A stretch of DNA of 64,000 bases. Origin: Bugula neritina. Lineage: Eukaryota; Animalia; Bryozoa. The DNA lies in contig OZ037767.1 of assembly GCA_964035545.1 (NCBI GenBank), forward strand, positions 29,838,628-29,902,627, given 5' to 3'. Of the stretch, positions 9,643-42,010 are shown one piece after another (the stretch's first letter is position 1; the number at the start of each line of letters is the position of its first letter). The translations under genes and the position numbers were made by a program. The notes under the pieces are model-generated. The model ran no database searches. It was given only the letters and a program-made list of their open reading frames with translations, and was not told the DNA's origin.

Positions 9643-12600
9643 TCATACATCACTACTTCCGTTCTCATTTTCATTAATGTGGACTTTGTTATGATAACTG
9701 TGGTTGTTTTCTTCTAGCTCAGGTTCATGAGTTTTCTTTAGGCTCAATTCTCGCTTTCGTTTTGCAGTTTTACAATGTCCCAATGTGCTCATGATAATGC
9801 ACTCTAGAAACTCTACAGCTGTGAGAACTGAGCATCCAATGAATAATCCAAGATGGCCGCCAATACTTCCTAGAAAACAAAGGCCCTTTCTTAGTAAGTC
9901 ATATTATGATGTAAAAAAATATAAAAATATGAATAATGAAATGCTGTTACTAACTGTTACCAAGTACATCCACTTTTGTAGTTGAAAATCTCAAAGCTAG
10001 ACAGAATGTGGGTATGATAGGAAGTATATTGTCTAACAGAAATAGCTTGGAAAAAGAAGACAGCCTATAACGGCCCTAATCTTTTGCTATTTTTATTGTG
10101 TTTTAATCTTGACTGATTTTGTGCAATAATTTTACTTTATCCTTGTCAATCTGACCACATCAATCACATCAAACTAGGATATTGATTGCAAACTCATTTA
10201 TATAAAACTGTATATTAAAATTTCAGTTCTGTAAGTTGGGAAACATTCATTTTCATCAGCCAACGAAAGTTGGTAAAAGAGTTTTATTAGCTTATTATTG
10301 CTGGCTCACTATAAATGAATAGTTATGAAATTTATTAAGTTGTGTGTTCAACAAGTGACTTTTTCCAATAGTTTAATAACTAATAACTATAATTCTTACC
10401 TAGTAGCGCTGTGCTGTCCATTGCCTTGTTCTGCACAGTCTCAGTTTCTGACATAGACTCATAATAAAGATCTAAACTCACCACGTTACCTCTAAAAATA
10501 CAAATAAAACATATTGGTACCACGAACCTAAGAGCTAAAACATAGCAGTGTCACAGCATGGGTTGTGAGTTTGGAATTGTTTATATTGTAGTACCAAGTA
10601 TGGCGGGAGTTCGTCAGCATGTAAAGTTATATAAAAAGTCACATTGAGTATGATCTCACCTGATATATTGAACTTGTGTGCCGTATTCTGGAACACCTGG
10701 TTGTACTTCTGGTAAAGTTATTTTAAACTTCTTTCCAAGATCTCCGCCGTAAGGGATATTAGGAAAGCTTGCATACGACAACTTGACGTCAAATTCTTCA
10801 TTCTTGCAGGCTATTGGACAGTCACATTCTTCGCCAAAGTTAGCATTGATTTTAGCTGAAGCATAAATATTGCAACAGTATGATAAGACATTTGTTTTCA
10901 ATTATATATTTATATTGCTTGGGTTTTTATACTGGTTGCCTAAGTCCAAATCTAAAACAATGTGAGTGAGTTTAAAAAGTTATCCATAGAAAATAATGTA
11001 TTTAAGTTATAAAGTAGTTTATATGTAGTAATGGTAATTGACCTTTAAAATTATTTCAGCAATATTAGTTTGGTTAATAACTACGTGATCAAATTTATAT
11101 AAATTTGAGCTAATTTAAAATCTATGCTAACTTGTTTAAATTTTCTATACAACCACTTACACAAACTTGTAATAAAGAGATTTCTGAGCTGCAGTAAATA
11201 AAAAAGATAAACTTGCTTATGACAGTTTGTTTACCTATTTCAATGAAAGCACATTGGCCGAGCTGCTCATAGCTGCAATCATCAAAGTCGCCGGGAAAGT
11301 AGTAGGGTTTGCATTGGCACTGTGCCACAACTCTGCTTAGTTTGCACTCTATTGCACAGGCTTCTACAGTGTAATGGTCTGCATATGTCAGCTTTCTCTT
11401 TGGGTTACATTTACCCCACGGTGGATAAAGATTGGATACCTAGTGCATGTAAAACATTGGGATTAGGAATAAAGAAAATACAAGCTCTATTTGACTATGT
11501 CAACGAAATGCAACAGCATTTAAAATGGCAGTTCTGATAGAAAACTACAATCAACAGAATCTGCACTAAAATATATTCAATAAAAAACTGTAGCTACTAA
11601 ACTATGCTGAAAATAATAAATAAATTTTAATTTCTAGTGGATTTCTAACCAAGTTTAATGACTCAAATCTGTTAGCTGCTGAATTATATTATATTGCAGC
11701 AGGCGATCTTACTCTGTTTTTGTTGAACCCAACGAAAGCCTTTTGTCCAGGTCCAGTTGAGTAGCCCATAGCATTTATCACTGGGGTTTGGTAGGGAGTG
11801 TGAACTATGAACTTTAACCCCAACTCACTGTTTCCTAACAGCTCCATAGCCTCAGCGTATTCCCACTACAATTGTTCACCAAATAATTAATACTTGTATA
11901 GCTCAACAATATGCAATATTTGTATGTTCAGCATATGATGAGCATTTCGACAGCGTGTTCTAAACAACAAAATACTTTTAGAGAATATATAAACATGCTT
12001 TAGTAGATATAACATTTTAAATATTATCTAATATTGCTTTTTATTTTATTGATAACTTGAATAAGAAAAAAAGATACTAGATTATTATTCTCTTTTTGCA
12101 TAACATTGTTTTCGAGTTTTTTTTATAGAATTTATAATTTATTTACCACTCATGTGTTAATCAACATTTTATTTGAAAGATACTACTTTTAGATATATAA
12201 TCATATTTTGTAGATTGTTTAGCTACACACTCTACTGTCTGTGCATGTTCATTTCTCTGTATGATATGACAACTCCACTTACTGTCTGAATGTCCAGCAT
12301 GATCTCTAACCCTCCAATTGGCCCAGCACTGTCTTGAATGAGAGGTAGGTTTACACCTTCTTCCTTGGCTAATGATTCAGGGATTTTATGGTTGAATGTG
12401 TAACAGTTTCCATAAGCTCCAAATTTATGGTCAAACCACTAAATAATATAACGTAAACATTCACAGATATATTGGTGTGCGTCACAATTACAGTTGGGCT
12501 ACATCTTTAAGCTAAAGGAACAGCCGATATCTAGGGATTGGAACATTAACCTAGTAAACATGGAGTCATGAGTTTAAACTCCAGTAAAGGCCATTGGTGA

Positions 12601-15600
12601 TGTTAGGAAGAGCATTCAGTCATAATAAACATTGCTGTTTTTCTTTTTGCTATTTGCATATTCACAGCATTCACACTAATTGCTTTTGCTAAATTATGGG
12701 GCTGTCGCCTTCCAAAGAGACCAGAAGATAAAATTACTTTACTGAAACTACTATATAAATATTATTTAAATGAAATGAATCAAGATTATCAATGTTGCAA
12801 AAAGCTGTTTTCATCTATAATTCAACATAAGAGACAGGAAGTTTGAAACCGAGTGAGTGAGAGTGAGAGAAATTTTGTAGGGACCACATAAACAACTGAA
12901 AAAGCACAAAATAGTTTAAAAACTCTGACAGGATTGTACAAACATAACTGACTAAATTATTGACTAATAAGGAGAAATTCAATATATTAAGTAAAAATTT
13001 ACTGAGTTGCATGCAACACAAAATCCTTTTTAGAATTTCTGTTGCGTTTCAAGTAGTTTAATAGTTTTTTACTAATTACCCGAGAGTCGCATTTCTTTCC
13101 TCGATATTTACAGTGTAGTAAAGTCTTAGGCTCTTCTGGGCCGTGGGATGAGTACTTATCAACCAGTTGCCAACCAGCCCTGCGTGTGAACTCAGCAAAG
13201 TTGAAGGTCTCGTTCCCACTTGCTGTGTTGTTTAAATTATTTGTGAAATTCTCTGCTGTAGTGTTGGACAAGGGTTCTACTGTTGCTGTGTCGATGACAG
13301 CTTGTCTTTTCACTCTCAAGTTAGAATGGTCTGAAATTATATTTCAAATTAAGCTGACTAAATTTGAACTAAAACGGCTACTATCTATATAACTACTATG
13401 ATTACTAAAACTACAGTTACTGCTACTAACATGCATTACTGTTACTAAATCTACTAACAATACTGCTACTGCCACAGCTGTTACCAGTATCATTACTATA
13501 ACTGCTAATATAAATAATAACTAATACCACCATAAGTAATACTAACACTACTACTACTAGTATGACATGACTATTACTACTACTGCTGGTGCTGGTGCTA
13601 CTGCTGTTACTATTATTGTTACTACTACTATTACTACTGTAACCCACTACCATTACTATTTATAGCAAGCTTGGTTCATTGATGTATAGAGATTTTTACT
13701 TTTCAATTACAAATGCTTTAAAAACTCACCATTTGAATCGTATTCAATGTCTTTGCCAGTCACCGAGCCACTCAAAGAAATGAGGTTGTTTTTCTCCATA
13801 CTGTACACATTTCCATTCCACAGCATTCTGTTCATAACATCGATCGAGAGCACACGATCCCACATATTGACGTTGGCAATTTCTGAGCCAGAAGATGCTG
13901 GGAGGGTTAAGTTGCCTGCTGTAAAATCAAATTAAAATTGTTTTGTGAACCACTTCTATTTTGAGCTATATATGAGTTGGCATAGCTCCTATTTCATAAC
14001 AAGTTTTAAAAAATTGACATTTATATTAAATACTGTTTTATAAACAAGACATTGGCATAATTATAATTATATTCATGAATGTTTACTAATGTTTGCCACA
14101 TTAGATTAATATGGCATTGGTTTCATCAGAATTCCTTTGAACTGTATTACCTAATCAGTTTTAATGTATTTTCAAAACTTCTACGATTAAGTAATTCTAA
14201 GAAAGGTTTTAAGGAATTCTACTAAGCTTCTTGCTAGAGACATTTATAAGCATAGACAGTTAGTAAAGGACTACTACTTCTTCAGGTAGGGTAGAGTTAT
14301 CTAGTGAGTGAAACTCATTTATCTCCATTGATTCTTTAGACTACCTATTAGAACAGTTACCATAGTAACAACAGACTTGTTGCACGCATCACACGTGCTT
14401 ACTTCTCACGTTGTTATCTGATAATTATTACCTTTTTATATAGCTCATCAAACAAGCCATGGAACTTTTTCAAACTATATTACCATTACAAGAGAACAAT
14501 ATTTATGATATCTTCTCAAAACTATCTTCAAATAAAATAATAATGGGCTAAGAGGCCCCTAACCCCTCTCATTTCAAATTCTATCTCAACCAAAGAACTT
14601 TTCATGTCATTCATAGAGCGATTTTTTCTAAAATCTAGTAAGCACTTTGGGACAACAGGCTTTATTCGGTAGAGCTAGGTAATGCATATTCACATTACAA
14701 TACTTGAGTGTGAAACTTTTAATCTAGTTCCAACATTTTTCAAATATTATCTAAAGTAAAAGTATAATATAAAAATTGTTTTTTACCTTGTAAATTCAAA
14801 TAACTTTCATATTCATTGAAAAACACCATTTTTCCAGTAAACGAGAATTCTTTGATATCAGCGATGGTGTCGTCTCCATATATCTCAAACGTATCTTTAT
14901 ATCCAATTAGGTACTTGTAAAGCTGAAAGTTAATAGCATGTAAATTACATAGGTAAGTGCACTTAGTTTATTATCTGTAATGGTATGTGAAAGATTTTGC
15001 TTAGTCTGTGATAAGAAATAGAAGGCTAGTAAGTGTGTTACTTGCAGTAGAAAGGCTGTTGGTGTAGCAAGCATAAATTCCATATTTAATGAGCTAGTTA
15101 GTCTGGGTTCAGCATTAATATTTCAGCATCTTCAATATTGGTTTTGGCTTTGTGGAAATCAATGCATTTGTAAAGTTTCATGATTTTCTTCTCAATTATT
15201 AATATTATAACCTTCCTTGGTCATTCAATAAATACTTTCAATACTCCATAAGTTGTATTTGAAATATGTTACACTAAAAATGCCAACAATACCAGCAATA
15301 GGATAGAATAGCAAAAATGTTAAGTTTAGTACTTGCAGTATTCCCAATACCAGCTCAGCACTAATATGATTGGTTTAGCATTAACATTTACACAATGGTT
15401 AGCTCAGCACTAATATATGTATGCAATGCCTTGCATCTAGAACTCCCAACTAGTATATGAATATTATGTAAGCTAATTTCTCACCTTCATTCTGTGATGC
15501 TATAAAAAAATAAAGCAGTAAAAATAAAATACTTATAATATATAATATATTTAACTTTTTACTAACTATAAACTCTCAGAAACTTTCATCATACTTAGTC

Positions 15601-18600
15601 TATTTATTGAATACAACAACTTAGGGGGTTGTATTCAATGCCAGTTTAATAATAAAAAGGTTACTCAACTATGTCTATGGTGGTCATAGTAAATAAGTGC
15701 TAAGGTTTCTTTCATTTTAAATTTATGCAGTCCTACAATACCATCATATATGGGTTAAAATTCTCGTGAGAGCATAACTTCTTATGCTGCATTTCTAATC
15801 TAGAAAACAGGCTTTTCTTAATTTCTCTATTACTGCACCTACCTCGAGGGGCTGCCTAGTTAAATTTACATGGTATTAAACAATCCAGAACAGTCCTAGT
15901 TATTCAACTGTGACTGAGGTGAGTGAATAGTACTAAAGTTAAAACAGTGAATAGTGTTGAAATTGGAAAAGTGAATAGTGATGGAGAAGTAAACTATACA
16001 TACATGGGAGCCTGTGTTGGTAGTGTAGTACTGGAGACAGACTGGATACCAGCTGTTGAAACTGTTGAGCAACACAGTACCTCCCTCAGAGCCAAAGAGT
16101 GTATACTTGATACCATAAATGTCAGGGGTGTCTTCTTGCTCTACTTGCTGTACTGAGAGTATTGTCTCATCTGGAACACAACAGAACATGTGGAATACAA
16201 CATAACTGCTGGAACACAACATAACATGCTGGTGGAATATAACAGAACTGATGGAACACAACAGAACTGGTGGAATATAACAGAACTGGTGGAATACAAC
16301 AGAACTTCTGGAATACAACAGAACTTCTGGAATATAACAGAACTGGTGGAATACAGCAGAACTGGTGGAATATAACAGAACTTCTGGCATACAACGATAA
16401 AAGTTTTGAGAAAGCAATAACCAACTCTGTGGCATTAATTATTATTCTGTTTCAGTCGAGCGGGCTTGGAGTTGAGCCTTTTGGAGAATATTTCCAAAAC
16501 CATAACAGCTTTTATATTGTTACTAATGACTGATTTATGATGATCATGGCAGAAAGCTTTCGTGACAGCCTATGCAGTCATACCATGTCAGAACTGTGGC
16601 TCAGGTGAAGCTAACAAAAAGTGTTTAGTTCCAGCTGCTCAATCAGTAATGTTAGAATTAAATTTCAATCAATCATACGTGCTCAGGTATGGTGAAAAGG
16701 GGTTAAGCATTTTAGCATGCACAGGCAAAAATATGCATGGTATTGGTTGAATGTAGTGTATAGTATAGTACTGTTTTTCGTCTTGCCTGTAAATTCTTAA
16801 ATCTTTGCATTATGTTGGCTGCAATACCAATCATTTATAAATATATTTTATTGCTGGTTAAAATTGGTTATCACCTCCGGGCTTCTAAACCACTGGCAAT
16901 AGTGAAAGCATGTGCTTGCTGGCAAAATAGTTAGCAATTTTCAAACATTATTTCTATAGCAACTCAGTAAAATAGCAGAGTGTTCAAAGCAAATTAATTG
17001 CTATCGAGACCCATTTGGTCAAGAATTTATATATTCGCTTGATTAATCCACAACTGATAGCCCATAAATTAATGTGTTGCTAAAAAATGAAGATGTCATA
17101 GAATTTAGTTGGCTTCCATCAAAGTGATTGGCGGTCAATGGTTGACAGTAGATAATGAACAATTTCAATTGTAAAAGTTATTTATATGCTAGAATTTAAA
17201 TTTGAAAGCAAATGATTAATTGGTAAAGCAAACCTAAATTTTCAATAAACACTTTAAATAGCTGAAAGAATTATTTACTTGTTGATCCCTTGTTCAAATA
17301 ATGCAATTTGTATTGCTCCATCAATAGATAGGTAACAAATTAAATTTCCTGAATTAAAAAATGACCGTAAGTTATACTGAATAAAGTTTACATATTCTTT
17401 GTTAAGCAGCCTACTTTGAATTATCATAACTTTTCATAATTTCTTTGGAGTTTGGAACAATTTTTAGTTTTTTAATTGATTTATTGCCCACTTTAATTTG
17501 ATTTATAATATTCCACAACTAAAATAAGCTGGCATATTTTCCAATCAAAAAATATGAATGAATGCAAATGAAAACACTTCAAAAAATATCTTTGTTGATA
17601 TTGGCTATGTCAACGCCCAGCTCACATAATTTACTAATCATCAAATTAAGTTTTTAATTCTGGCACAGATATTATTTCAGTGTAACAGATATTTCTGCCT
17701 ATAAAACATTTTTTCCTTCTTGCATGCACTTTAAGCATTCCCACAATATGTAAGGATAGGTTTTGAAGTGATGCAGCCTCATTGAATAATAATCGAGGCC
17801 AAGAGTTACTACTGCTAGAGGTACAGCTAGATTCACTGCTAGATTCACTGCTAGAATCCATGGCTCCATAACAGCTGACCTACTGAGCACTTGACTTATA
17901 TACTGTTTGACCTATATAGCACCTGACCTACCTAGCACTCTACCTACATAGTACCTTGTTAGTTAGTAATCATAACAACTGAAGATATTCATATTATAAT
18001 ATTATTTTAAGTCTGTAACTGTAACCTAGACTGCAGTTAGCAATTGCATTCAGAATGTTACCAATCAAATGTTTTTAACCATATATAGTTCCAAAGATCA
18101 TTTCACCTCTATATAACTACAGATCGGCTTGCAAATGAATTTAATTATATTATTTATGTACTCGGGCAGTAACTAAAATCTTACGTCAAGCAACACAAGT
18201 TAATCACATCCTAATCTTTTAACCTGTAATATATGAGCCCGATACCAACTTAACACCCATATAGTATAGGCTATCAAGCCCTAAACACTTATACAAGATG
18301 CTTAAACTCTCAGTTTTCTAATGACATCATTGCACTGTTCACGTTGACATGCGAACCTCTGGTGGTAAAGTTATATATATCTGGGATATAAACTCCGCCT
18401 CCAGCCATGCTGGTAGCTTGACCTAAGAGCTTTTAAAGTAAATCATAAGCTCTTCTTGACATCGGCAATGACCATGATAGAATTTGATTCACCCATGCAG
18501 CTATAGTTGAGCTATAGTTGCACTGCAGTTTAAACCTCTGTCTATACCGTGTCATAGCTGCTCTCCGATATCATTTTAAATGAACATATCTTGGCACGTA

Positions 18601-21600
18601 TTATGTGCTCTATGTTTGACAACTTATAATTCATTGTTGATCCTGGAATCCCATGTATATCCTGAATATAACGGTTTTCAGGTTCTTACTAGTTCAAACT
18701 GATCATTATTCGAGTATGTATGTGTTTCAGGATGTAGAATTCATTCCTTTTTGTCAGTCATAAAACTCATAATGATAATTTATGAACCTAATTTAGTCAT
18801 TCTGTCTAGCAATCTTAAAACTTGGCGTTTAACTTCTTGGCAAAATACAAACGGTATATAAACTACTCTTTTATTAATGTCTGGTTGAAATACCGTTATG
18901 TAATAATTAAGTTTCACTGCCTTTTATGTTGAGGAGATATATTTTATGTCTGTGACCACGATGGTAGTCACGTGTATGCACTAGACCACGTTACTTCGAA
19001 ACAAACAGCTAATTGCAATACGATAAACAGTCTCTTCAATTTAAGTAAGGCTAAACTCTTAAACTCTATCAAATGTGAATACGTGAACATTTAGCTGCTT
19101 GAGCATGTGCTGGAGCCAATCAACTCACTTTAGGCTATTCTTTTCATTGGTAATGGCTATCATCCTTACAAATTTTAATTGCATAATTGAGGAGACTCTA
19201 AGTTACAGAAATTCAAAATTTAAAATTTGATCAAGTTTTTGATGTCAACGCAAAAGCTGAAAAAGTAATATAGTGTTATAAAAGTTGGTCAACTATTGGA
19301 TTATAAATTAACACAGGAAAAAAATTTAAACTAAAAGTAAAAAATCGCAGCAACAGTCATGATAACAAAGTATTAGAACGCAAGACTACACAAATCTTTT
19401 GGTAGCACCCAACTTTGCTGCAAAAAGTGCTTAAATTTATTATAAATAAAAGACCAGGTAATCATATCTTTTCAACAACGTTTTACATAAATAAAGTTAG
19501 GTACCAAAACGTTTCACTTGAAACTTTTGCATACTGTTTTTATTACCAGTTTTAGGCTGCATTTTCTCTACATGATTGTTTGTAAATCAACACAGTTCTA
19601 AGTTGCATTTAATCCGAATATAATTTGTACTAAGTTACATACACTTCAATATCAAAAACTTCACACTTTCACTTTCAAAGGAGGATAATGCTAAGTGTCA
19701 CTATTATAGGAATTTCCATCGTACTTCTTAGCAAGTTTCACTATAGTTTCAGTTTTCACTCACCTCCAGACCCGTAAGATAGGACAGTTCCCAGTTGACT
19801 CCGTCTCAAAGTTTTCACCCAAAAACAAAGCGTCATCCCATTGCTTACTGACGAAGAGTTGACGTACCGAAAGTTACTGGATATGGCCATAGGTGTCAAA
19901 GATTGTTCATGGCTCACAGAGTATATTAATCCGGTTTGGGCCACTACAAACCATCAATGAAAATCAGCTACCAATATTATTAGATAGAATTGAGCACAGC
20001 AGTAATTGACTGACCGTGTAACAACTGAATTTTAAACTAAGCTTCAATAGTAAAACTGTAAAAGCTTCAAAAGTTTAACTTGCAAGCTACTCATTGCACT
20101 ATAGGGGCTCAACTCAACCTATATTCTCTGGCACATTTACATAGTATAGCGTCAGTTTTTAAGTTAGAGTTCAGCTGAAGCAAGTTGGATTTGAGTAGAA
20201 AATCTGTGCTCTTATATATAATCTTCACTGAAATCTACATCCATAACCTATGTATATAGCATAAGCTTTCTACTTGATGCTATTATATTGAAGGTTGGTA
20301 GAGTTCAGGGCAAGGTTTATTACTGCACACTTTTCCAGACAAAGTTAGTTGCAAAAAACTGCTTAGTGACTGGAAGTGGTTTGCAATAATATCAACCTGT
20401 ACTTGGCAAGTGATAGATAATCAGCATTTATCTCCAGGTTTGTTCATACTAAGAATAGCATATTAATTTAATTCTTGCTGTAAAATCATCCGTATAACTT
20501 TATACCAGCCAAACAGGAATTATTTGACCGTAGATATACGGTTGGGCAAGCTAGCTGGAAAAATCTATCTGCCTTATGAGTAGTAAGTAATTAATTTTTT
20601 GTAGAAGCAAATTATTATAATGCGGCTCAGTAAAGATCAGAGTGTATTATAATACACAGGTTTAGGTGATTTAACAGCCAAAGTGCTTGTCTAATATTAG
20701 TTTCATTCTCAGCCTTTGTATGTGTGAACTACATTTTTATGCACAAGAAAAGATGCGGTTAGCTTTTTAGTTATTGGTTTTGTAAGATAAATTGGTACCA
20801 ATTTTCTCAAGAGTAAATTTACATACAATCAAAAACCGTATTATGATATTGAAAATGTACCACCTGTTTTATGCTATTTATAACAAGATTAGAAAATGAA
20901 GATGCATACACAAATCATCATAACTTTTAGAAGATGTGGTGGAAGTAGAATGTGTCTTCTCAGTCTATGACTGAAAACAATCATTCAATAATTATAAAAA
21001 AACTTATTTTTAAAAAATGGATAAACAATTGTTTACTAGGGTTTCAACATAGACCACATTTGATTTATTGACATTATTAGAATAAAATTTACATGACAAA
21101 TTTCTTGCATAGTTTCGTAATATATTATTGACCAAGCAAAATAATTAACCAATTTGCTTTAATAGCCTGCCAGGCATAAATGTGTTCCTGGAGCAGAAAT
21201 GTGATTGTGCTGAGTGGGTAGGCAATTCATGCTGGGTGGAGGCTCACCTACATGTTCCAGTTAGCCAATCACCAGATATATATTGAGCAATGCTGTAATG
21301 TTTCAAACGTTATCAGTGAAAGAGCTCCATGATTACAGCTATATACTCAAGCTGTGCGCGATCTTGCATTTACATTATATACAAAAACTTGTTTGGTAAA
21401 AACTGAAACTTTTTTTACGCAAAGTTATAGTGTAGTCCTACTCTGTTATTCTAAGTAAGGTTGAGTTATATATATGCAGATCTTACCTAAACTTACAATG
21501 GATTGACGCAATAAATTCTATAAACACTAAACATCGAGGTTAAAAAAGGCAGTCAAATGTGTGTTAACTGCACAGGGTGTCACCTTCACAGTATTTCATC

Positions 21601-24600
21601 TGCAAAGGGTGTCAGCCTGCATGTGTGTCACCTGCATATAGTGTGTCACCTTCACGGTGTGTCACCTTTACAGTATTTCACCTGCAAAGGGAGTCAGCCT
21701 GCATATGTGTGTCACCTTCACAGGGTTTCACCTTCATAGTGTCTATTTAAAAAAACTGCAGTAGATAACCATTTTGTTCTGAGTAATATTTTCCAACTCA
21801 CTGTTTACACAAAGTGGTGGTTGATCACTAAAAGTTCCATTTTCGGTACAAGTCTGTTCTAAGGCCCCATCCATGGGTACAAAGTTGTTCCCCTCGCAAT
21901 AAAAAGTTATGTTGGATCCTTCACTGGTTGCGGTACGTTCCACGTTTGAGTAATCACCATTCAGGTGAAAGTTCAAACCATTGAAAGCCAACGGAAGCAT
22001 GCAGATTGACTTAGTTGCCAGTGTAGTAGTTGTAACTATGGGTGCAGCTGTTGTCTCTTCTTGATCTGTAAAGCAAAGATTAAAAAAAATGTATATGCAA
22101 TAATGATAAAAATAAAACTAAGTAACAGACGGTTGCTGCATTCAGTCTGTTTTTGTTATTCTCTACTAATTTCAGTTTTGCTAAAAGCATTGTTTCTGAG
22201 AGCAGTATTTGCGTTTGATGAATACAAAGTTAGGCATTAAAAGCTGCCATTTAAACTAGCATGTATCTACTGCATGTAATGTAAATGCTGGAAGCTGTAA
22301 GTGTCAAATGTTCATTCAAATGATGCACGCAGGTAAAAATGTTTCACAAGTCAAGCTCTTTATTTTATCAAAGTTTACATAAAATAAATTGAATCATCTG
22401 TCAAATAGTCATTGTATTTTCTAACATAACTGCAGCAGTATATGTGCATTTGAAGCAAAGCAAAGTTACTTTAGCTGCCCAGGTAAGCTAACCAAAAACT
22501 GTCAAATCTATCATAGAAATATGTTGGTTTTTTGTTGATTATTTTCAAGTTAATTGTCATATAAGTTTATAGCCGCCATGCAGTGAGCTTATTCATCAGT
22601 TTATTGACACATGTCTTGCTAGTTTCTATTTTCAAGTAGAATTGGGTTTAATTATAAAATGAAGTATGATTGATTTATTTAGTTCTTTTGATTAGCAACT
22701 CTCTATTAGTTGTAAATATACAGATGTAAGGGGCCGGTGCTGTAACTTTCTGATGTTTCTTGAATCAAATGCCATCGCTCAGTTGTGAGAGGAAATATAA
22801 AGTGCTTTAATAAATTTCCTTACATGAGAATAACATATTAGCTAATCTTGGGACTGCACTATTATAATACACTAGTTTGCTTATAACCAAGTCAGTTCGA
22901 TCTATCCAAACAATTAAAATGTGCATGACTAGGGCCAAAGCTGCTGTAAATCTTTCCCATGATACTTTTCACTTATTTAAAACAAATTTTGTGTTTCAAT
23001 ATATGAAGCACATCAATGTAAAATAATTACAGTAAATTAACTAAAAGATTCTGCTATCTTTAAATTGTTGGTTACCTTATTATTTATTGACCAGTTTATT
23101 GATTACGGAAGAGGTCATTGATAATCAACTCAAATTATTGATTCAAGCTCAAAACAGTGTACTTACTCAATGCTTATATATGCAAAACTCTAGAGTTGTC
23201 TAACAATTAACAAACTTCATAATGATCTAAAGTTTGTATGTTAGTCCTTCATTTGCAGTTAGTTTGTATACTTATGATCATGATACATCTGATAAGTCCT
23301 TTAAATGACATGCATGTACATAAATCATTGGCATCATGCATGCACTACCATTCCTAAAATCCTGTTAAATTGATTACTATAATTTGCCAACAGTTCCTAA
23401 CATCACTTACCCACTTTATACTCAATTTTATATCCTGTCTATTTATAACCCAGACTTCGGTCACTACTTGTTAAGCTGTCTAGAGAGCATTAGTTTGTTG
23501 AATGCCAAGACACGAGACTGCCAATGCCAGTTTGAGCTGTCAAATACCGGAGCCTCTCTTTGACTTACCGAGTAGAGAAGCCAGATTGGAGACCTTCACC
23601 TGGTCAGATGAGTCACTCAACTCCGGGATCACGTAATCATAACTGTACACAGACAGTACTTTCCGCAGATTTGCCAACGCCTCTTCTGTTAAATGTGATT
23701 TTCTCCACCTGCAGAAATATATTGGCACTAAAATTGGTAGCTCATTTGCTTTCAATCATTACTGAGTACTAGGTCATGCTCACTTTGCTTGTGGTGACAG
23801 CTAACCGACATAAATCTGGAGTGATTAGGTCACATTAATTGTGGCTTACAGAAGATGACGCTTATATATTGAAGATGTAAGAGCACCGATCTGGTTATCA
23901 CTTTTGCTGTTATTTATTCTACTTAGAGAAATTCTGAGTCATCCAAGACTTTTCACTTTAAAGCCAATCAAGGCAAATGTTTTGTGAGCAGATTAATTTA
24001 GTAACAACTACGTATGTTAATTCTTATAGTGTGCTAAAACAACTTTTGCTGAAGATTCGATCTAAAATGTATAGCTACTGATAAATTGAAAGTCTATAAT
24101 TGCTTACTTGTACAAACTATGGTATGCAAAGCTGATTGCTTGCCAAACTAGCAACATCTTTAAGGTTACGTCACTTGTAACAGTCAGGGCTGTTTTTCTA
24201 CCCCCAATGTAATGTCACCTTTTAGCTCAAATATGTGACTCAAAAGGACAATTCGCTGTTTGAATATAAGTGCAATACTTGTTTGGTGTAACTGTGACAG
24301 TGCTATTTTCAGAGTTATTGCCAATAAAGTATTGCCTAACTTTATTTGAAAATAGTTCGTTTTAGTCGCCTTAGTTAAAACTCTATCTTAGGATTTTAGC
24401 AAAGCCAGGCGCAAATGTAAGATCTCTAAAACTTTTACTTAGAATTATATAAACTTCTATAAAGTCTAAGAGATAGAAAACCTAAAAGAATTAATTTTGT
24501 TCTGAATAAAACTTTATTGGAAGCCAATTATAAAATATCTTTCGATACAATTTACAACACGATTATAAAAGATAAAAATTGCAGTCGGAAGTTATAAACA

Positions 24601-27600
24601 TCAGAAGTATGACATGTAATAAGCATTTAAGAACCAAGATCTGACGTATGGTGTTGCAACATCAGAAGAATTATAATCAGACTGCAGAAGATTATTTATA
24701 CAGTTACCATGACGACCTGTCTGGAGCAGTGTATCTCCAGCAGCTGATGTTATTCAATGCAATCTTCAGTGTATAAATTTGCATGCGAGAAGATTTTAAT
24801 GACTATTAGGTGACCGCTGCATAAATTTTTTACTTTTTTAAATAAAAGTATGGAAATCAAACTTCCTCTAGCTTTGCCATAGCAATCTTACTTCCTTTGT
24901 TCTTTTTCACACCACAATATTGTTTTATTTTTCCAGTTTTTACTCTCCAGTGAATTTTGTAAGGAAGTAGACATTTATCATTTCGCTTTGCCTATTCTTT
25001 CATCCACACTAAAGCCATTTATCTTTTAATTTTAAAATATAAAGACAAAAGAGATAGATTTTGAGCATCATAAATTTATTATCAGTATCTTTCCAAGTGG
25101 ATGCCTAAATTTATCTAGTTAAAAACCTCGTCTTTTTGCTCACCAGTTTGGAAATACTTAGAGAAAATAGCAAAACTTTTCACATTTTGTTATATTTATA
25201 GCTTTTGTTTTTAAAATCTATAGAGAAGCTTTTTTGCAATACGATAACCGAAGCCTAAAGCATTTATTACTTTAATGCGTAGGAGGCCCACCCATATAAT
25301 GACCATATTAATATTTCTTAAACTCATTGATGGCAGATGTATACAGTTAACGTTTCTTTCAAGTTCAAGATTTATAACAACTTTCGAGGTTTAAATAATG
25401 TTTGATAGTAAAACATCAAATTATTAAAAATCATCCAGAAATTAGTAAAGTTGATTTATAATAATTATATCATCTTTTATATCCATATTCTCAATTTACA
25501 AAAATTACGTAGGTAGTATAAAAATTATAATTATTAAATAGTGACTTATGAACATTAATTAGTTCAATAGTTTTCTAAAAGCTTAGATTGTTAATATAAA
25601 TTGGATTATTTAAAACTTTTTCAATAACTGTAACTATACATCATTTAATAATTAGATAGAAATAATACAGCAAAATGAAGATAGTTTTGTTGTAAATTTA
25701 TAGCTTCAATTAGTTTTGAAAAACAATTCGAATGTCAAGTTTATTGACGTCTTAAGCTGTATTTGATTCATACAGGCCATTATGGTGATTATGCAATACA
25801 TGCACAGTAGAGAATATATTTTGCAGTCAATTCAGATAAATTGATTTAGCTTTGGAAATAAATCGATTGCAAAACTTTAAATTGCTTACTCTCAAGTTTG
25901 CAATCTAAAAGTGGGTAAAATAAGTAGATGCGTGGTATGTGGGTGGTCAAACAGCATTTTATAGTTTAAAATGACCAGTTTTGTAACAATATACGTCTTT
26001 TGAAACGAAATTAAAAGCTTTTCAATGTCATATTAACATATTATAACAAGACAACTGAATTTTTATTTAATTTCAAAATTTAGGTATTTCTATAACCTAA
26101 ATTTTGAAATTAAATAAAAATTCAGTTGTATCGTTATCAATTTTTTTAACCTAAAAGTTTTAGTTTTAGTTATACTTTTACTAACATAAAATCATATTAA
26201 TAACAATTTGCAAAAATAAAAAAAAAACAAAATTTGTTTACCCAAATGTATGGTGAATTTACCAAACAAAAAGTATTTTACTGAATACTTTGTGGTTCAA
26301 CTCTTAATCTCACTACTTTACTCGCACTTCTAATAGTGGTCAGGAAAATATTTGTATGTAAACAATATGTTTAGTGCTAGCTATATAAAAGACATTTGAA
26401 ATTCTACTTATAGCAAATTAAGGTGAAACTTGGGCACATTGAACAATAATGAGTCGAAGAAATATTAGAACATTAAAATACAAGCACAGAAAGGGATAGC
26501 TACTACATGTAAAAACATTTGCCTTCATCAAGGATTGAATTTTGAGACCTTCAACTTGCAAGCCCATATGATACCCATTGTACATATTATAGATACTATA
26601 GGGGAATATTTATTTAATTCTACTACCACACTACCAACACATGTGCAACATTTTCCAATTAAATCAGTGCAATCATAAAAATGAAACCTGTAAGGTTTGA
26701 TTTATAGTTTTTGTGTCTTTCAGTCTGTCTTCAATGACTGATTACTTATGGGAGGTGATTACAGAGAGCATGTGGGCTTAATAGCCTATGATCTTATTAG
26801 AATGTTGGACACTACTGTCAAAGCCTGGTGATGGATTACTGAATAATTGAGTCAGATTATAATAAATAACTCGACTTAATTCAGCTTAACTGATAAAAAA
26901 GTTGTTTGTCATCTGAATAGATTCACTGGTTTTTTGCAGTGTATAGTTATCTAAAAATTGTACAGTTCACTCTAAGAGGGAAAAATGTTTTGAAACTGTT
27001 GATATTTGAATTAACTCACCTGTTGAAATTGCAGAATGTCACAGCTGGGAACTCAATTTTTTCCTTGTTGATTTTAGATATTTCTGTGGTGGTGAGAAAT
27101 TGATGGTACGTGTGAATGCTCTGATATATTTCATAAGTAACGTACACAAAGCAAGCTGAAACAAGAATAAAACCAAGGATACAAAACTGACCAAAAAAGA
27201 GTTAATGATTGCCACAGAACATTGCATAATAATTTTAATAAATATTGATATCATAAACATATTAGTAAGAATGTTAATTTCTCAAACTAAGTTGAAGGCA
27301 AGAACTTTGAAAATTTGTTTATTAGAAACAACTTTAAGGAAACAAAAACTGGTTTCCCATGTTTGAGGTGCAACCAGATGTTATAAGCATATCAAAGATA
27401 CAGATTGTGCTAGTTTTAACATAATTTTAGTTTGCATACATTTTAGAGTGATAGTAATTTTTGAATCTAGTTTTTAGTTGCCTGATTTGTGCAGCTTTTA
27501 CTTGCAAATGCTGTAAAAATTTACTATTTTCGGAGCATAAATGAATTTGTGCTGCTACTAACTTTTGTTTGACTTTCAAATGTTATGGTATTTTATAGCT

Positions 27601-27882
27601 TAATGATTGTCTAGATCAGTATTTAAAAAGCATGCAACGGAAATTTTTATTGATGTTTTCACCAAATTTTTTTTGTGTTCTGTTTGCAGAACATTTGATT
27701 TGATTTGTGACTGAAAATAAAGAGTTGATCATACCAGCTAGAACTACAATCCACACAGCTCTTTGTACTTTAGCAGTTGATATAATTCTTGCTACTCCAT
27801 GAGCTGATGTATTCTGTGCCCAATATAACTCATATATTTCTTCTTCTTCTGCAGTTTTCACCTCTTCTTCTTCTCGAGACAT
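9643..27882 (-). CDS. DEG/ENaC (ASIC-like) amiloride-sensitive channel subunit with inserted Sushi and pentraxin domains, ~884 aa
   Basis: Exons 27735-27882, 27020-27155, 23569-23708, 21802-22065, 19764-19943, 16004-16170, 15485-15499, 14787-14922, 13730-13918, 13080-13330, 12283-12438, 11713-11865, 11235-11439, 10660-10855, 10400-10491, 9643-9869. All phases match and the total is 2655 nt. Family motifs: NTSAHG, TM1, EFPAVTFCNFNR, LLHCKYRGKKC, YGNCYTFN, GLEIMLDIQ, PPWGKC, Cys-rich thumb (CQCKPYYFPG; CDCPIAC) and TM2 LLGSIGGHLGLFIGCSVLTAVEFLE. Confidence 0.93.
12517..12625 (+). mobile_element. Degenerate copy of the tRNA-derived SINE at 40009-40245
   Basis: Shares TCTAGGG..., CCTAGTAAACA.G.AGTCATG and AAAGGCCATTGGTGATGTT.GGAAGAGCAT.CAGTCATAAT with the reverse complement of ~40133-40244. 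Confidence 0.75.
13390..13660. repeat. Degenerate (ACT)n/(ATT)n simple repeat, intronic
   Basis: Runs of actactact/attactact; accounts for ORF 13426..13653. Confidence 0.7.
13730..19943 (-). other. Pentraxin (CRP/SAP-like, LamG fold) domain encoded by five exons inside the channel gene
   Basis: In order: MTLCFWVK...GTVLSYG, NSWYPVCLQY (cf. the WHHIC pentraxin signature), MKLYKY, and SEIANVNMWDRVLS...GNVYS (cf. CRP GDIGNVNMWDFVLS). Both canonical Cys are present. Confidence 0.85.
16171..16400. repeat. 20-bp minisatellite abutting the acceptor of a pentraxin exon
   Basis: Unit GGAATA(C/T)AACAGAACTGGT / GGAATACAACAGAACTTCT, ~11 copies. Confidence 0.9.
21570..21742. repeat. Degenerate minisatellite (GTGTCACCTTCACA-like), intronic
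   Basis: Repeated gtgtcacct(t/g)ca units. Confidence 0.7.
21802..22065 (-). other. Thr-rich linker plus Sushi/CCP domain exon (phase 1-1) of the channel gene
   Basis: ETTAAPIVTTTT-CMLP...EGSNITFYCEGNNFVPMDGALEQTCTENGTFSDQPPLC: four-Cys CCP spacing, with F in place of the usual W. Confidence 0.88.
26051..26129. repeat. Perfect 35-bp inverted repeat with a 9-nt spacer
   Basis: ACAACTGAATTTTTATTTAATTTCAAAATTTAGGT at 26051-26085 and its exact reverse complement at 26095-26129. Confidence 0.9.
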
Positions 27883-29271: not shown

Positions 29272-32200
29272 TTAAAAATTCATCTTTGCTGAAGGTGCCA
29301 GCAATGTTACTGTTTCATAGCTGGGTAATGCATCATCTATGTTAGCAGGTGCTCTGTCTACTGGACTGGAAGGATAGAGAGAGCTATTGGCCATCACCTA
29401 CATGCAAAGTGAAACATAATTCAGTGTCATACAATCTTTGGGCTTCGTGACTGTATTATAGAACCTATGGCCGGGGATAAGCTAATAGGCCGTTAAACAG
29501 TAAACAAGGGAAACCAACTCCTAAACATATCAGAGTATACAATTGAGGAAGATAATTTAATGAATTTGGAGGCTTTCCTGGTAAAATTGATTAGAAAGTC
29601 AATAGCAAATAATAAATGTGTAGACAAATCTTACAACAAGATTTTATTAATAGCCGACATTATTGAACTTCTTACCTTTACAATTCATAAAAGGTAAATG
29701 TTGAATTGGTGCCAATAAACTAAAAGTTTTTAACCTGGCTTTTGAGAAACAAGGCTAAAACTATAGTCAAATCTTTGAGTACCATTCATAGCTGTTAACT
29801 CTTTTATTGCTAAAAGCTGTAAATCTACCAACCCTGTTATAAGCATGACAGTAAGCACTCTAAACATATGGAGTCCGAAAGCACCCATTAATACATCAAA
29901 TGTTTATACATACATCACTATACTGAGGTGGTAGAAAGGCAACTTCAGAGGGAATCTCCAGCACTGTTTCCTCTGGTGCAGAAGGTTGGCTCTCATTGGT
30001 TGAAGGAAGTAATGCTGGCATCGTGAGTGAATAGGAAGATGTATTGTCTCCATGAAGAGACTCAACGCTGTTGTAGCTGCGCTGACTAGATCGGGCATGG
30101 AATCGTAACTCCTCTATAGATTCATGCCGAGAAATGTTGTGCAATTCTCTTTCATCTAAGAATATTTTTAAATAATACTTTGGAATATTCGATATGCAAT
30201 TATTGGTCATTTTAATGTGATTCACAGCACATGGCCACTTACACGATGACTACTGATAACCAGTCTCTCTAGTTTTAACAACAAATCTCTAAGGCTATGT
30301 TAGAATGTGGACTAAAGTAGCACATACTATAGTTGTGTATATGCTATTCCTAAGTTTTATCACTTTAGTACTTAAACTTATGTGCTTTCCTCAAAATCGG
30401 TTTATCAATTTACCCAACAGTTACCCTTAATTATACGAAATTATGTACAATAACAATAATCAGCTTTGTATGCAATGTCTGCCATTTTATAGTTCTGCTC
30501 ATATTATTTATAATAATTAATTATAGACTTATGAGTTATTCTTAATACAATATAGTGAATATGTTATAAATAGGATTTTCTAATCAATACTTATTTTTAG
30601 GATTTAAAAAAAATAAGATTTTTTGCAAAAAGCTAATTAATTGCATTGCAAGACTAGTACAGCTACTGCCAATACAAATGTCAAAAATCATTGTAATATT
30701 TCAGATTCTTATAAACTCATTTCAATACAAAATTACAAAGTACTCTTCAAATATTTCTTTTTAAATTGTATGCCATTTCGCAAGTCTTCAATATTTTTCA
30801 ATTCTAGAGTTGGTTTGCTTACAGAGTATGCAATAAGTATAGACTTAAATCAACAGCCACAAGAAAGAGGGGCCCTTACCAGCAACGTTGTTGATTTCAT
30901 GATCAATCCTCTCAGAGCTCTTGCAATCCCAGCAGTGGTCAAAAGAGGAAGCGTTAGCGCTGATAACACAGGCTAATATTACTAACACAACCAGAATGAA
31001 GGCTCCTGCAATACCAATGGTTGGCAGAATTGATTCAACCTTTGACTCAGCCTTAGTGCTCTCAATCCTACAAATGTACAACCAGTATATATACATGTAA
31101 AATCAGTGTATATATATGTAAAATCAGTGTATATATATGTGCAATCAGTGTATATATATGTACGACAAGCGTAAAAATATATGCATGTGCAATCATTTTG
31201 TATATACATGTACAGTTAGTGAATGCACAAGTACAATTAGTGTATATATACATGTTAAATTAGTGTATATACATGCATGTACAATTATTGAACTATTGTA
31301 TACACATGTACACCTGGTGCATATACATGTACAACCAGTGTGTATTAATGTAAAACTATAATATGTGTACATACATACATGCTAAATTAGTGTATATATA
31401 TCTACGAATGCAAACTTGTAAAATTGTGTGATAACCACAGGCATACCATGTGTATGTTCCTGTAGTGACCTCAGCAGATGTAGATGGTGCTGCCGATGTT
31501 GACTCACAGCTCACTCCACAATTCAGCACTGATGTCCTGTAATCAAAACAGCAGTCGTCTCTCTCTTCAGCCACAGACCAGCAGTAAGACGTATATTTAC
31601 AGTAGAATCTCTCAATAGTAGCTGCATTTACTATAAGGTAATCAAATATGCTCTTGGACAATTCTAAATATCTAAATATCTTTTGCCAAGTCAATTGGCT
31701 TTAGCAAATAGCAGCACAAGGTCACACAACTTCTGTAAGAGTTATTTAGTTTAGCCTGAACTACTAATCAACTTATCAATAAGTTCAGCTGTGCTCGCAT
31801 AGATGAAAGTAGTTGAGGTTTCTTAGTATTAATCATGAATCACAGTCTTTCTAGTTGTGTGTGTGTGTTTCCTATATTAATAAGAGGTCAAGGCTAACAG
31901 CTCTATCTGTTAGTAAGAGATACATAGAACATGTAGCCTAATGCACGAGTATGGCAGAAGTTACATCGGCCTAAATTCACACACATCTATCAATATGATA
32001 TCTGTAGATAGTAAAGTACTCCAGGTAAAGGTTTTATTTACAGGTACAAACAATAAACAGGTTATTTCTAAAACAACTTGCCTAATAAAAATGTAAGTGT
32101 AAAATTAGCATGAATCTAGTTAAATAAAGATTCTTCAAGTTTTTCATGTTAGCTGAATGTACTCTTGCAGTTACTGGTAGCCATATTTAAAATCAGTAAG

Positions 32201-32347
32201 TTCAACTTGGTCAAGTAAATGAAACACAAAACCATCATTTTTTGTTTTCTAACAACCACAAGTTTAGAAAAGAGTTCTACTTTAGCTTGTTATGCCATGC
32301 CTACCTGCCAATAACAATATGGTGATGACGATAAGTCGTATGACCAT
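29272..32347 (-). CDS. Type-I membrane protein with a small 6-Cys ectodomain and a PY-motif tail (WBP1/VOPP1/Shisa-like architecture), ~260 aa
   Basis: Exons 32305-32347 (signal peptide MVIRLIVITILLLA), 31447-31630 (CKYTSYCWSVAEERDDCCFDYRTSVLNCGVSC plus S/T stalk), 30880-31067 (TM IGIAGAFILVVLVILACVI), 29914-30155 (LPPQY), 29272-29397 (LPSY, stop). 783 nt, phases consistent. Confidence 0.82.
31075..31400. repeat. AT-rich degenerate tandem repeat, intronic
   Basis: Units such as AATCAGTGTATATATATGT; source of several spurious ORFs. Confidence 0.7.
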
Positions 32348-33699
32348 GCTACTAAAACACTGCTTTGTAATAGACAGCACTGAGTCCAGTGGTAGCAGTT
32401 ATAACTAATGAATAGTCAAACTTAGTTTATCTTATAGCATAGTATTGATTATTGGAAAAGAGGTTATTGCGTAATTGTCAGAATGCTAGTCCCATAGTGC
32501 CCAGAAGTGTATTTCAATATAGACATCTTTTACTGTCAATAGCTACACTAGTTAAGCACTATAGCCACTATAAAAATAGAAGTTGTTTGAAACAAAATAA
32601 ACATGCTATAAATAGAAACTTATAATAGAATACATTATAGAATAATGTTGCAATAACAACTAAAGTTTATGTCTTGAAGTAAATTGAAATATTTTATTTA
32701 GAATATTATTATATAATTGAATGTTGGTGTATGTTCATATATTGCATTATAGCTTTGTTGTTATACAGGCTTTAAAAGAAAAAACTATGTATAGCTTGGA
32801 GATCAGAAAGCTGATGTTTTTTGCACATGTTGTTATATGCACTCTTTTTCTATGACTCAGTAACATGTTAAACGATCAATAAAACATATTCTCATAATAC
32901 TAGAGTACTTGTATATAATTAATTAGATTGCATACCAGTTGTAACACAGATGCAGTAGCTTTTTAGAAATGTTTAATTGTTATGCTCGTTTATAATTCTA
33001 GCTTTGAACACACAAAAATTGATATCTAATAATCACATTCATAGAAATTCAAGTATTTCATATATTTTGCTTAAATTGATATCTATAAATAATCATATTT
33101 ATAGAAATTCAAGTATTTGATATTTGCTATATGTAGAATTTAGGCTAGAATTATTAGGAGTCTGTTTTCAATTGAGTCTTTACATGCTTTGTGCTTCAAA
33201 TTAGTTTATTTTTCTACAGTTTATTGCAGATTAGAAGTGCTTCAACCAAGTGTTGAATAATTTACTATAATTAAATACATTTGAGCAATTAACTGAGACT
33301 ATATTTTTGGTAGCACATCAATAGACCAATTATTTCACTATACTTTTTATTGATAGAAAAGGCATTGCACATAGAAAACCAAAACAATATTTTAAATTGA
33401 AAACAAATATATAAAGTTGGGGCGCGTACACTAAAAAACAAATTACAGAATAATATTATAAAGTTTAAGATATATTGAACTTATAATTAGCTGATAACTA
33501 ATACCTCTGTTAGTTCATTAATACAAATTCTATGTGTAACAAACCACAAACAGCCTAAACCTTGTCAACTATACTACAGTTTGTAATAAACTGGCACAAC
33601 AGTGAACACTACTACTAAACATACAATATATCTAATTTGTTACGAGAGCCATGCACCCTACGCAGACAAGCTCAGTTTCATGCTTTCAAACATAACCTG

Positions 33700-37593: not shown

Positions 37594-38104
37594 GGTAGAC
37601 GTCTGTGGCAGCTCGACATCATCTTCTACTTATATACTTAATGACAACCGTTTACTCATTACTTTGTAAAGTTCAAGTGGCAAATGCAATCTAATATTTG
37701 TTTTTGAAAGTTCTATGACAAGGTTATAGAACGAGAAGTCTATTAACCATTGCTATATTATTATATCATAGTTTTGCATGAAATAGTGTCATCAACTTCT
37801 ATCTTTATATGAAAGTTTTATTTCTAACGACTTAATTTAAATTTATATCACAAAGTTTAGTTTTAAAAAGCACTTATCATGTTAAATATTCTCATCATTT
37901 TCTTGAAATTAAAAGCAATATTTAAATAGAAAATCTTGGTTTTAATGAGAAAGGCACGATGCTGATAGTATAAACTGGTATCTTATAAAGATACACAAAT
38001 ATTTTATATAACAGTCTGCTTTGATGAAAGAACATTGCCTGCAAGCAAGCAATCTTGCTTTTGTAAATCAATATACTGGCTGTTGTAGTATACAGTGTAT
38101 AGAT

Positions 38105-38224
38105 ACACACACACAGACACACGCACACACGCACACATGCACACACGCACACACGAGCACACACGAGCACACACGAGCACACACGAGCACACACGAGCAC
38201 ACACGAGCACACACGAGCACACGC
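38105..38224. repeat. CA-rich microsatellite plus 10-mer ACACGAGCAC x7
   Basis: Directly visible tandem units. Confidence 0.9.
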
Positions 38225-39972: not shown

Positions 39973-40008
39973 CTGTTGTATATAAAACGACTCATCAACT
40001 AAACTAAA

Positions 40009-41147: not shown

Positions 41148-42010
<863 letters not shown>

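What the first reader, a model, noticed from the sequence alone, without database searches (positions are those of the whole stretch)
9643..27882. DEG/ENaC ion channel with Sushi (CCP) and pentraxin domains built into its extracellular finger region
Seen: between FPAVTFCNFNR plus the first finger helix (exon 3) and the resumption of the channel (exon 10, FNFAEFTRRAGWQL...LLHCKYRG), six same-strand exons splice in phase. They add ~317 aa: a Thr-rich linker, a Sushi domain and a full pentraxin domain. These exons have no signal-peptide exon or stop codon of their own, so they read as part of the channel and not as a nested gene. Established: the finger is the hypervariable stimulus-sensing region of DEG/ENaCs (ENaC protease gating, FaNaC peptide binding, degenerin tethering), and pentraxin and CCP modules are pattern-recognition, complement and matrix-binding domains. 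Inference: a trimeric channel showing three pentraxin heads could be gated by glycans, microbial patterns or matrix tethers, i.e. an innate-immune, chemosensory or mechanosensory channel. I am not aware of this architecture being characterised, but I cannot search to confirm novelty.
Basis: partly seen in the sequence, partly recalled or inferred. Interest (0 to 1): 0.92.

Follow-up and report, generated by a model that had tools for sequence, protein, structure and literature searches.

The report
Sodium channel with built-in pentraxin head
A bryozoan sodium-channel gene (DEG/ENaC family) splices a Sushi domain and a diverged pentraxin-like domain into the outer sensing part of the channel, followed by a furin cut site; RNA supports it, a second copy in the genome has the same layout, and similar inserts lie unnoticed in annelid genomes.

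Summary
Confirmed. A 16-exon minus-strand gene reads openly as an 884-aa DEG/ENaC subunit. Six exons (951 nt, 317 aa: Thr linker, Sushi, pentraxin-like domain) sit in the finger. RNA contigs from four runs splice the pentraxin exons onto the channel's 3' half (13730>13330 in all four); three of them reveal the 15-nt sixth exon. The 5' join (23569>22065) is supported only indirectly. The organism is Bugula neritina or a close sibling. An old paralog (C3:17.19 Mb) has the same insert and intron phases. The insert exons are under purifying selection. An R-x-K/R-R furin site follows the module in both paralogs and in another bryozoan's ortholog. The channel groups with BASIC/ASIC5-like channels and lacks ASIC His73. 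The pentraxin call rests on weak, collinear hits, and its classical signature is altered. Annelid channels of another clade carry other modules at the same place (Owenia 4xLamG; Capitella PAN/MAM/Kringle); database models split all these genes. No paper describing this was found. Best guess: a tethered binding head that modulates gating; immune sensing is less likely. The scan earlier noted a mucin-plus-furin finger insert elsewhere in this genome, not this architecture.

The parts
27735..27882 (-). Exon 1: start codon, cytoplasmic N-terminus with the HG motif, start of TM1
   Evidence: 47% identical to paralog exon 1
27020..27155 (-). Exon 2: end of TM1, beta1, FPAVTFCN motif; Thr where ASICs have His73
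   Evidence: Pfam ASC E 4e-08; comparison
23569..23708 (-). Exon 3: first finger helix; phase-1 donor where the insert begins
   Evidence: 6 silent and 0 replacement codon changes against another B. neritina sample
21802..22065 (-). Insert exon 1 (exon 4): Thr-rich linker and Sushi/CCP domain with 4 Cys
   Evidence: Pfam Sushi 22.1 bits, above cut-off; paralog exon 24.7 bits
19764..19943 (-). Insert exon 2 (exon 5): start of pentraxin-like domain, first Cys (LCFW)
   Evidence: only PDB hits are neuronal pentraxin-1 and -2, E 0.086 and 0.12; RNA loose end joins it to the next exon
16004..16170 (-). Insert exon 3 (exon 6): pentraxin-like core with second Cys; signature altered
   Evidence: RNA contigs in 4 runs; three beta strands in a single-exon model; same intron phases as the matching exon of nearby pentraxin-PAN genes
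15485..15499 (-). Insert exon 4: 15-nt micro-exon, five residues
   Evidence: letters between joint sides in 3 RNA runs; strong acceptor and GT donor; present in NCBI assembly
14787..14922 (-). Insert exon 5: pentraxin-like domain, acidic NEYE motif kept in the paralog
   Evidence: RNA joints in 4 runs; 49% identity to paralog
13730..13918 (-). Insert exon 6: end of pentraxin-like domain (NVNMWD strand)
   Evidence: Pfam Pentaxin E 0.015, below cut-off; CRP best PDB hit; joint 13730>13330 in 4 RNA runs
13305..13316 (-). Furin consensus site RVKR, residues 464-467
   Evidence: RVRR at the same place in the paralog; RVRR and RHKR in another bryozoan; none in the finger of 15 insert-less invertebrate or ASIC-type channels
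13080..13330 (-). Exon 10: furin site, variable Asn/Thr-rich stalk, then the channel resumes (last finger helix, first palm Cys)
   Evidence: best matches are plain DEG/ENaCs; 10 of 11 replacement changes against the NCBI assembly fall in the stalk
11235..12438 (-). Exons 11-13 (12438-12283, 11865-11713, 11439-11235): palm, beta-ball, Cys-rich thumb
   Evidence: Pfam ASC; RNA joints; top hit KAF6040558.1 B. neritina
9643..10855 (-). Exons 14-16 (10855-10660, 10491-10400, 9869-9643): thumb end, knuckle, TM2 with G-C-S filter, C-terminus, stop

Best explanation
It is one transmembrane protein: a BASIC/ASIC5-like DEG/ENaC subunit whose finger carries, by exon shuffling of phase-1 modules, a stalk-Sushi-pentraxin-like head. 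Shown: the gene structure, the 3' splicing, the paralog, purifying selection and a conserved furin motif. Inferred: furin cuts after the head in the Golgi, so each subunit keeps the head through TM1 and the first finger helix only, and a trimer shows up to three flexible heads. The heads bind a large extracellular partner (matrix, cuticle or cell-surface glycoprotein). That tether holds the channel in place and, through the first finger helix, biases gating, so the channel works as a contact or stretch sensor, much as the CUB-pentraxin-furin ectodomain of the adhesion receptor GPR126 does.
For: Open 884-aa frame. RNA joints of insert to channel in 4 runs. Paralog with the same insert exons and phases, 33-49% identical in the insert and 58-75% in the channel's 3' core. 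22 silent against 4 replacement codons in the pentraxin exons between two B. neritina assemblies. Furin motif kept in three genes although the flanking stalk varies. The finger is the gating-stimulus corner across the superfamily (PMC11026163) and holds the furin sites of ENaC (PMC9540061). Independent annelid inserts at the same place are all adhesion or matrix-type modules: LamG x4; PAN, MAM, Kringle. GPR126 has pentraxin followed by a furin site, with force-dependent shedding proposed (PMC6954182).
Against: No ligand, cell type, current or cleavage was observed; all mechanism is inference. A long flexible Thr-rich linker transmits force or binding signals poorly. The exon 3 to exon 4 joint was not read directly. 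An in-frame skip of the whole insert is possible and was not excluded. The pentraxin fold is not confirmed by a model of the whole domain.
Confidence: 0.4

Rival explanations
1. Address label only: the head clusters or anchors the channel at a site (synapse, cilium base, epithelium), as neuronal pentraxins cluster glutamate receptors, and the gate answers to something else (peptide, pH, a small molecule, or it is constitutively open).
For: Long low-complexity linkers on both sides of the head would uncouple it from the gate. The only PDB hits of the first pentraxin exon are neuronal pentraxins (weak). BASIC-clade channels are constitutive or activated by small molecules (PMC9949801).
Against: The insert sits exactly in the gating corner, not on a terminus; a conserved furin site is not needed for simple anchoring.
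Confidence: 0.22
2. Protease-released cap: the module keeps the channel shut; furin makes the first cut and an outside protease makes a second cut in the Thr linker, which opens the channel and sheds a soluble Sushi-pentraxin protein (like the two-step activation of gamma-ENaC).
For: One conserved furin site (two in another bryozoan) at the module's C-terminal edge. Gamma-ENaC is cut once by furin and needs a second protease (PMC9540061). The scan noted another channel in this genome with a long finger insert ending in a furin site (s1-445917, not checked).
Against: No conserved second site on the N-terminal side (only one R-x-K/R-R in the protein). A folded, conserved two-domain head is more than an inhibitory peptide needs.
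Confidence: 0.18
3. Pattern-recognition channel: microbial glycans or phosphocholine bind the pentraxin heads and open the channel, for immune, symbiont or larval-settlement sensing.
For: Pentraxin-like domain plus a complement-control module. Acidic residues kept near the positions that hold calcium in CRP (NEYE in both paralogs; CRP positions from my own knowledge). The genome has expanded secreted pentraxin-PAN families.
Against: Signature H-x-C-x-[ST]-W and the GQEQD motif are altered in both paralogs. The head is conserved, not diversifying, and present in two copies only. CRP-type binding relies on pentamer avidity (own knowledge).
Confidence: 0.13
4. Not one protein: the Sushi-pentraxin exons start a separate transcript joined only to the channel's 3' half, or the main isoform skips them.
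For: Exon 3 to exon 10 is in frame. The 5' joint was not read. NCBI lists three separate genes here.
Against: The pentraxin-to-channel joint is in all four RNA runs, and no skip joint or loose end at 13330 was listed (177 minor ones not shown). The 1548-nt contig fits exons 1-10 with about 128 nt of leader. The NCBI 297-aa model joins exons 1-5. No signal-peptide exon. Same layout in the paralog.
Confidence: 0.07

Closest known systems
BASIC/ASIC5-like DEG/ENaC channels of spiralians and deuterostomes (e.g. Lingula XP_013402272.1, Owenia CAH1783640.1, Glandiceps XP_077984573.1)
   Same: Two TM helices, HG motif, FPAVTxCN, Cys-rich thumb, TM2; 35-38% identity in the C-terminal half; grouped together with support 94
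   Different: Their finger stretch is 67-83 aa with no folded module and no furin motif; here it is 439 aa. The TM2 Asp of GDIGG is Ser here.
Vertebrate ENaC alpha and gamma
   Same: Furin consensus site in the finger (PMC9540061; RHKR, RVRR seen in fetched ENaC-alpha proteins)
   Different: ENaC releases a short inhibitory tract; it has no Sushi or pentraxin domain and lies in another clade.
C. elegans EGAS-1 to -4 (EGF plus ASC domain channels)
   Same: DEG/ENaC fused to extracellular protein-interaction modules; function unresolved, no currents in oocytes (PMC10424705)
   Different: EGF, not Sushi-pentraxin; their domain layout was not examined here.
Uncharacterised annelid DEG/ENaCs found here: Owenia fusiformis locus of CAH1775106/7 (4 LamG) and Capitella teleta CAPTEDRAFT_191217 locus (PAN, MAM, Kringle, MAM)
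   Same: Folded extracellular modules encoded between the FPxVTxCN exon and the channel's second half; Owenia's are of the same concanavalin-like superfamily as pentraxins and end in a Thr linker with a dibasic site
   Different: Different modules and a different channel clade (long-knuckle group, support 90), so probably independent insertions; one-transcript status not tested.
Adhesion GPCR GPR126/ADGRG6 ectodomain (CUB-pentraxin-SEA with furin site)
   Same: A monomeric pentraxin domain next to a complement-type module, followed by a furin site, on a membrane signalling protein (PMC6954182)
   Different: A GPCR with an N-terminal ectodomain, not a loop in a two-TM channel; no homology beyond the pentraxin fold. 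A works-like analogy only.
Bryozoan secreted pentraxin-PAN genes (tandem array 30-80 kb from the window)
   Same: Weak similarity to the first and last pentraxin exons, and the same intron positions and phases around the core and last exons
   Different: Secreted, with PAN instead of Sushi, canonical W-H-x-H-C-F-T-W and HEQD motifs; only distantly related, so a family-level donor at most.

Membership tests
DEG/ENaC (Pfam ASC) | Pfam ASC match above cut-off | tested here: met
   exons 2 and 13 at 33.2 and 35.6 bits, cut-off 23.6
DEG/ENaC (Pfam ASC) | Two TM helices, N-terminal HG, post-TM1 FPAVTxCN, Cys-rich thumb, G-x-S filter in TM2 | tested here: met
   filter reads G-C-S
DEG/ENaC (Pfam ASC) | Trimeric, amiloride-sensitive sodium current | not testable with these tools
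   needs expression
ASIC proper | His73 and Asp78 in beta1 (PMC9949801) | tested here: not met
   Thr and Ser at these positions in the ungapped comparison
ASIC proper | Falls in the ASIC clade | tested here: not met
   outside the clade of ASIC-type sequences, support 100
BASIC/ASIC5-like group | Phylogenetic grouping | tested here: inconclusive
   groups at support 94 with proteins that databases name ASIC5-like or BASIC-like, but on 216 columns and without a vertebrate BASIC
Sushi/CCP | Pfam PF00084 above cut-off, four cysteines | tested here: met
   22.1 and 24.7 bits in the two paralogs; Cys 163, 198, 214, 227
Pentraxin domain | Pfam PF00354 above cut-off | tested here: inconclusive
   15.5 bits on one exon, cut-off 25; only single exons were scored
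Pentraxin domain | Collinear similarity to solved pentraxins and the conserved Cys pair | tested here: met
   first exon hits NPTX1/2 residues 28-51, last exon hits CRP 151-187; Cys269 and Cys334 kept in both paralogs
Pentraxin domain | Signature H-x-C-x-[ST]-W-x-[ST] | tested here: not met
   reads PVCLQY here and PFCLHY in the paralog
Pentraxin domain | Concanavalin-like beta sandwich fold | tested here: inconclusive
   single-exon model gives three strands, pLDDT 63, no fold match; the joined domain was not folded
Short pentraxins (CRP/SAP) | Secreted pentamer with calcium-dependent phosphocholine binding | not testable with these tools
   membrane-tethered here; binding needs experiment
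EGAS channels | EGF repeats fused to ASC | tested here: not met
   no EGF hit in the insert exons

The most novel reading that the evidence does not exclude
Spiralian animals have repeatedly turned the DEG/ENaC finger into a docking site for whole recognition modules (Sushi-pentraxin in bryozoans, LamG arrays in Owenia, PAN/MAM/Kringle in Capitella). This makes an unrecognised class of ion channels gated directly by binding to large extracellular partners (matrix, glycans or microbes), armed by furin, and hidden so far because annotation splits these genes.
Probability: 0.3. Interest if true: 0.9.

Novelty: new variant of a known kind. Interest (0 to 1): 0.74.

Why it matters
How DEG/ENaC channels couple to extracellular tethers or large ligands is a long-standing open point, because the tether partners are separate proteins that are hard to rebuild in cells. 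Here the binding module is part of the channel chain, sits on its own exons in frame, and ends at a conserved furin site. It can be deleted, swapped or left uncut in a simple oocyte test. The same design appears independently in annelids, so it looks like a recurring solution and not a one-off. Public gene models break these genes into pieces, which explains why domain-architecture searches miss them.

Tried and rejected
Five-exon insert (my first model, 879 aa): rejected when RNA showed the 15-nt exon. Nested gene with its own signal peptide: no good candidate exon in intron 3, and RNA joins the insert to the channel. Assembly chimera with the nearby pentraxin array: rejected, since the array is only distantly similar and an older independent assembly has the same order. 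Word-index protein searches with the Sushi exon and the pentraxin core exon found only one B. neritina genomic fragment and nothing. Two JGI metagenome scans found nothing. Atlas search of one exon gave only low-score LamG-type leads. Single-exon fold search was uninformative. Profile searches of the two middle pentraxin exons against PDB gave no pentraxin. Ten literature searches found no description of the architecture; the library lacks many subscription papers. About a dozen other DEG/ENaC genes sampled in this genome show no such insert.
Full report
Observation. On the minus strand, 16 exons from 27882 to 9643, all with GT-AG introns, read as one open frame of 884 aa. It has the DEG/ENaC landmarks: HG motif, TM1, FPAVTFCN, Cys-rich thumb, TM2 with a G-C-S filter, and Pfam ASC hits above cut-off on exons 2 and 13. 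Between exon 3 and exon 10 lie six exons of 951 nt (317 aa). The stretch between FPAVTFCN and the first palm cysteine motif is 439 aa, against 64-92 aa in insert-less relatives. My first model missed the 15-nt exon at 15499-15485, which RNA revealed.

Organism. The best database hit of the thumb exon is KAF6040558.1, 'ASIC5' of Bugula neritina, 97% identical. The NCBI assembly of that species is about 86% identical to the window over the gene, introns included. The genome is therefore B. neritina or a close sibling; it has 216 Mb.

RNA evidence. One stretch could be laid (10380-16250; four runs, kept as contigs, recorded as probable RNA). Contigs lie on exons and, apart from a few repeat fragments, skip the introns. 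Joint 13730>13330, from the last pentraxin exon into the channel, is in all four runs, as is 14787>13918. Three runs show the micro-exon letters. One 1548-nt contig covers part of exon 10 and three full insert exons with the micro-exon, then runs on for 994 nt; its loose end is the 3' end of exon 5. Exons 5 to 1 need 866 nt, leaving about 128 nt of leader, which fits a full-length message. This is arithmetic, not a read joint: 23569>22065 was not seen directly. The NCBI annotation of the other assembly joins exons 1-5 into a 297-aa ASC-positive protein and splits the rest into two more genes of 281 and 284 aa. A skip from exon 3 to exon 10 would be in frame. No such joint or loose end was listed, but 177 minor loose ends were not shown, so a skip isoform is not excluded.

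What the insert is. Exon 4 is a Thr-rich linker and a Sushi domain (Pfam above cut-off in both paralogs). The next five exons are a diverged pentraxin-like domain. The evidence is weak per exon but consistent. The only PDB hits of the first exon's two-sequence profile are neuronal pentraxins 1 and 2 (residues 28-51, E about 0.1). The best hits of the last exon are CRP (residues 151-187, E 0.045) and Pfam Pentaxin (E 0.015). The two cysteines are kept, and intron positions match those of nearby secreted pentraxin-PAN genes. The classical signature and the GQEQD motif are altered in both paralogs, so this is not a CRP-like lectin by sequence. The whole domain was not folded, because the joined step was left out at the operators' request.

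It is old and maintained. Three insert exons each find exactly one other place in the genome, all in a second DEG/ENaC at C3:17,191,061-17,203,480; a fourth confirms it. That paralog has every intron in the same phase, 33-49% identity in the insert and 58-75% in the channel's 3' core; its micro-exon was not located. Between the two B. neritina assemblies the four larger pentraxin exons show 22 silent and 4 replacement codon changes, similar to the channel core. About a dozen other DEG/ENaC genes sampled in the genome are plain.

Exon 10 begins with RVKR (residues 464-467), the only furin consensus in the protein. The paralog has RVRR there. An ortholog from another species, on a 3.9-kb contig that starts at this exon, has RVRR and RHKR; its insert exons are off the contig, and that it is a bryozoan is my inference from 47-78% identity. 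The stalk after the site varies strongly in length and sequence. None of 15 insert-less invertebrate or ASIC-type channels has such a site in the finger, while both ENaC-alpha sequences do. Cleavage itself is inferred.

Which channel. A tree of 48 fetched proteins on 216 columns of the C-terminal half, using the database fragment of this gene, places it among channels named ASIC5-like or BASIC-like (support 94) and outside the ASIC-type clade. It has Thr where ASICs have His73 (PMC9949801). Non-mammalian members of the BASIC clade are uncharacterised according to that paper.

Not a one-off. The exon search also returned an Owenia fusiformis protein that starts with a LamG domain. Its locus has a TM1 exon, four LamG exons, a Thr linker with a dibasic site, then the second half of the channel, annotated as two genes. 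A Capitella teleta locus has a TM1 exon, then PAN, MAM, Kringle and further MAM exons before the second half, with a retroelement fragment in between; its database model lacks TM1. Both belong to a different clade with a long knuckle insert (support 90), so the insertions look independent. That these annelid exons form single transcripts is inferred from order and strand only.

How it most likely works. The finger is the corner of the trimer where peptides, proteases and ions act across the family (PMC11026163), and ENaC is cut there by furin (PMC9540061). After a furin cut at 467 the Sushi-pentraxin head would stay attached through the first finger helix and TM1. All modules seen in such inserts are adhesion or matrix types, and a pentraxin followed by a furin site is also the layout of the GPR126 ectodomain (PMC6954182). 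I therefore favour a tethered binding head that anchors the channel to a large extracellular partner and biases its gate (0.40). Rivals: anchoring without gating (0.22), a protease-released cap with a shed head (0.18), microbial pattern gating (0.13), not one protein (0.07). None of these steps was shown.

Novelty. Ten full-text searches found no description of a DEG/ENaC with pentraxin, Sushi, LamG or MAM domains in the finger; the library is incomplete. The known precedent for extra modules is nematode EGAS (EGF plus ASC; PMC10424705). It is a member of DEG/ENaC, not an ASIC, with an undescribed architecture: a new variant of a known kind. Interest 0.74: real, RNA-backed, conserved, recurrent and directly testable, but with no functional data and one joint still unread.

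Noticed in passing
G000:C3:17191061-17203480 (L011-L013): Intact paralog with the same Sushi-pentraxin insert, a longer stalk, and two copies of the thumb exon (L013:3162-3362 and 3641-3844), probably mutually exclusive.
   Followed up: yes
L017:2189-3429: Ortholog from another species (Logan SRR25569789) has three tandem copies of the thumb exon, each with good splice sites; the window's gene has one.
   Followed up: partly
L024:4798-19374: Owenia fusiformis DEG/ENaC with four LamG domains in the finger position, split into two NCBI genes.
   Followed up: partly
L025:732-14951: Capitella teleta DEG/ENaC with PAN, MAM, Kringle and further MAM domains in the finger position; a retroelement gag-like frame lies between them on the other strand.
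   Followed up: partly
P0033, P0085, P0131, P0160-P0168: A clade of 900-1000-aa spiralian DEG/ENaCs with a 450-550-aa insert between thumb end and TM2 that has no Pfam match.
   Followed up: no
G000:C3:29755000-29808000 (L001-L007): Tandem array of about nine secreted pentraxin-PAN genes 30-80 kb before the window start; intron positions match the insert's pentraxin exons.
   Followed up: partly
window 13235-13295: The stalk right after the furin site has ten replacement changes in 20 codons against the NCBI assembly, while the rest of the gene is conserved.
   Followed up: partly
window 12586-12626: Short intronic repeat fragment matched by very many RNA contigs whose loose ends carry a Pol III B-box-like motif; probably part of a tRNA-derived SINE.
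   Followed up: no
window 29899-40000: Minus-strand exons upstream look like a single-pass membrane protein with Cys-rich, PAN-like pieces and a proline-rich tail.
   Followed up: no
window 41150-42008: Unusually long, nearly pure AC microsatellite (about 430 units).
   Followed up: no
window 1-5200, 51500-53150, 58000-64000: Neighbouring genes: Exo84 (Pfam on the NCBI neighbour), and by eye a TMEM272-like gene and a MutS-family gene.
   Followed up: no
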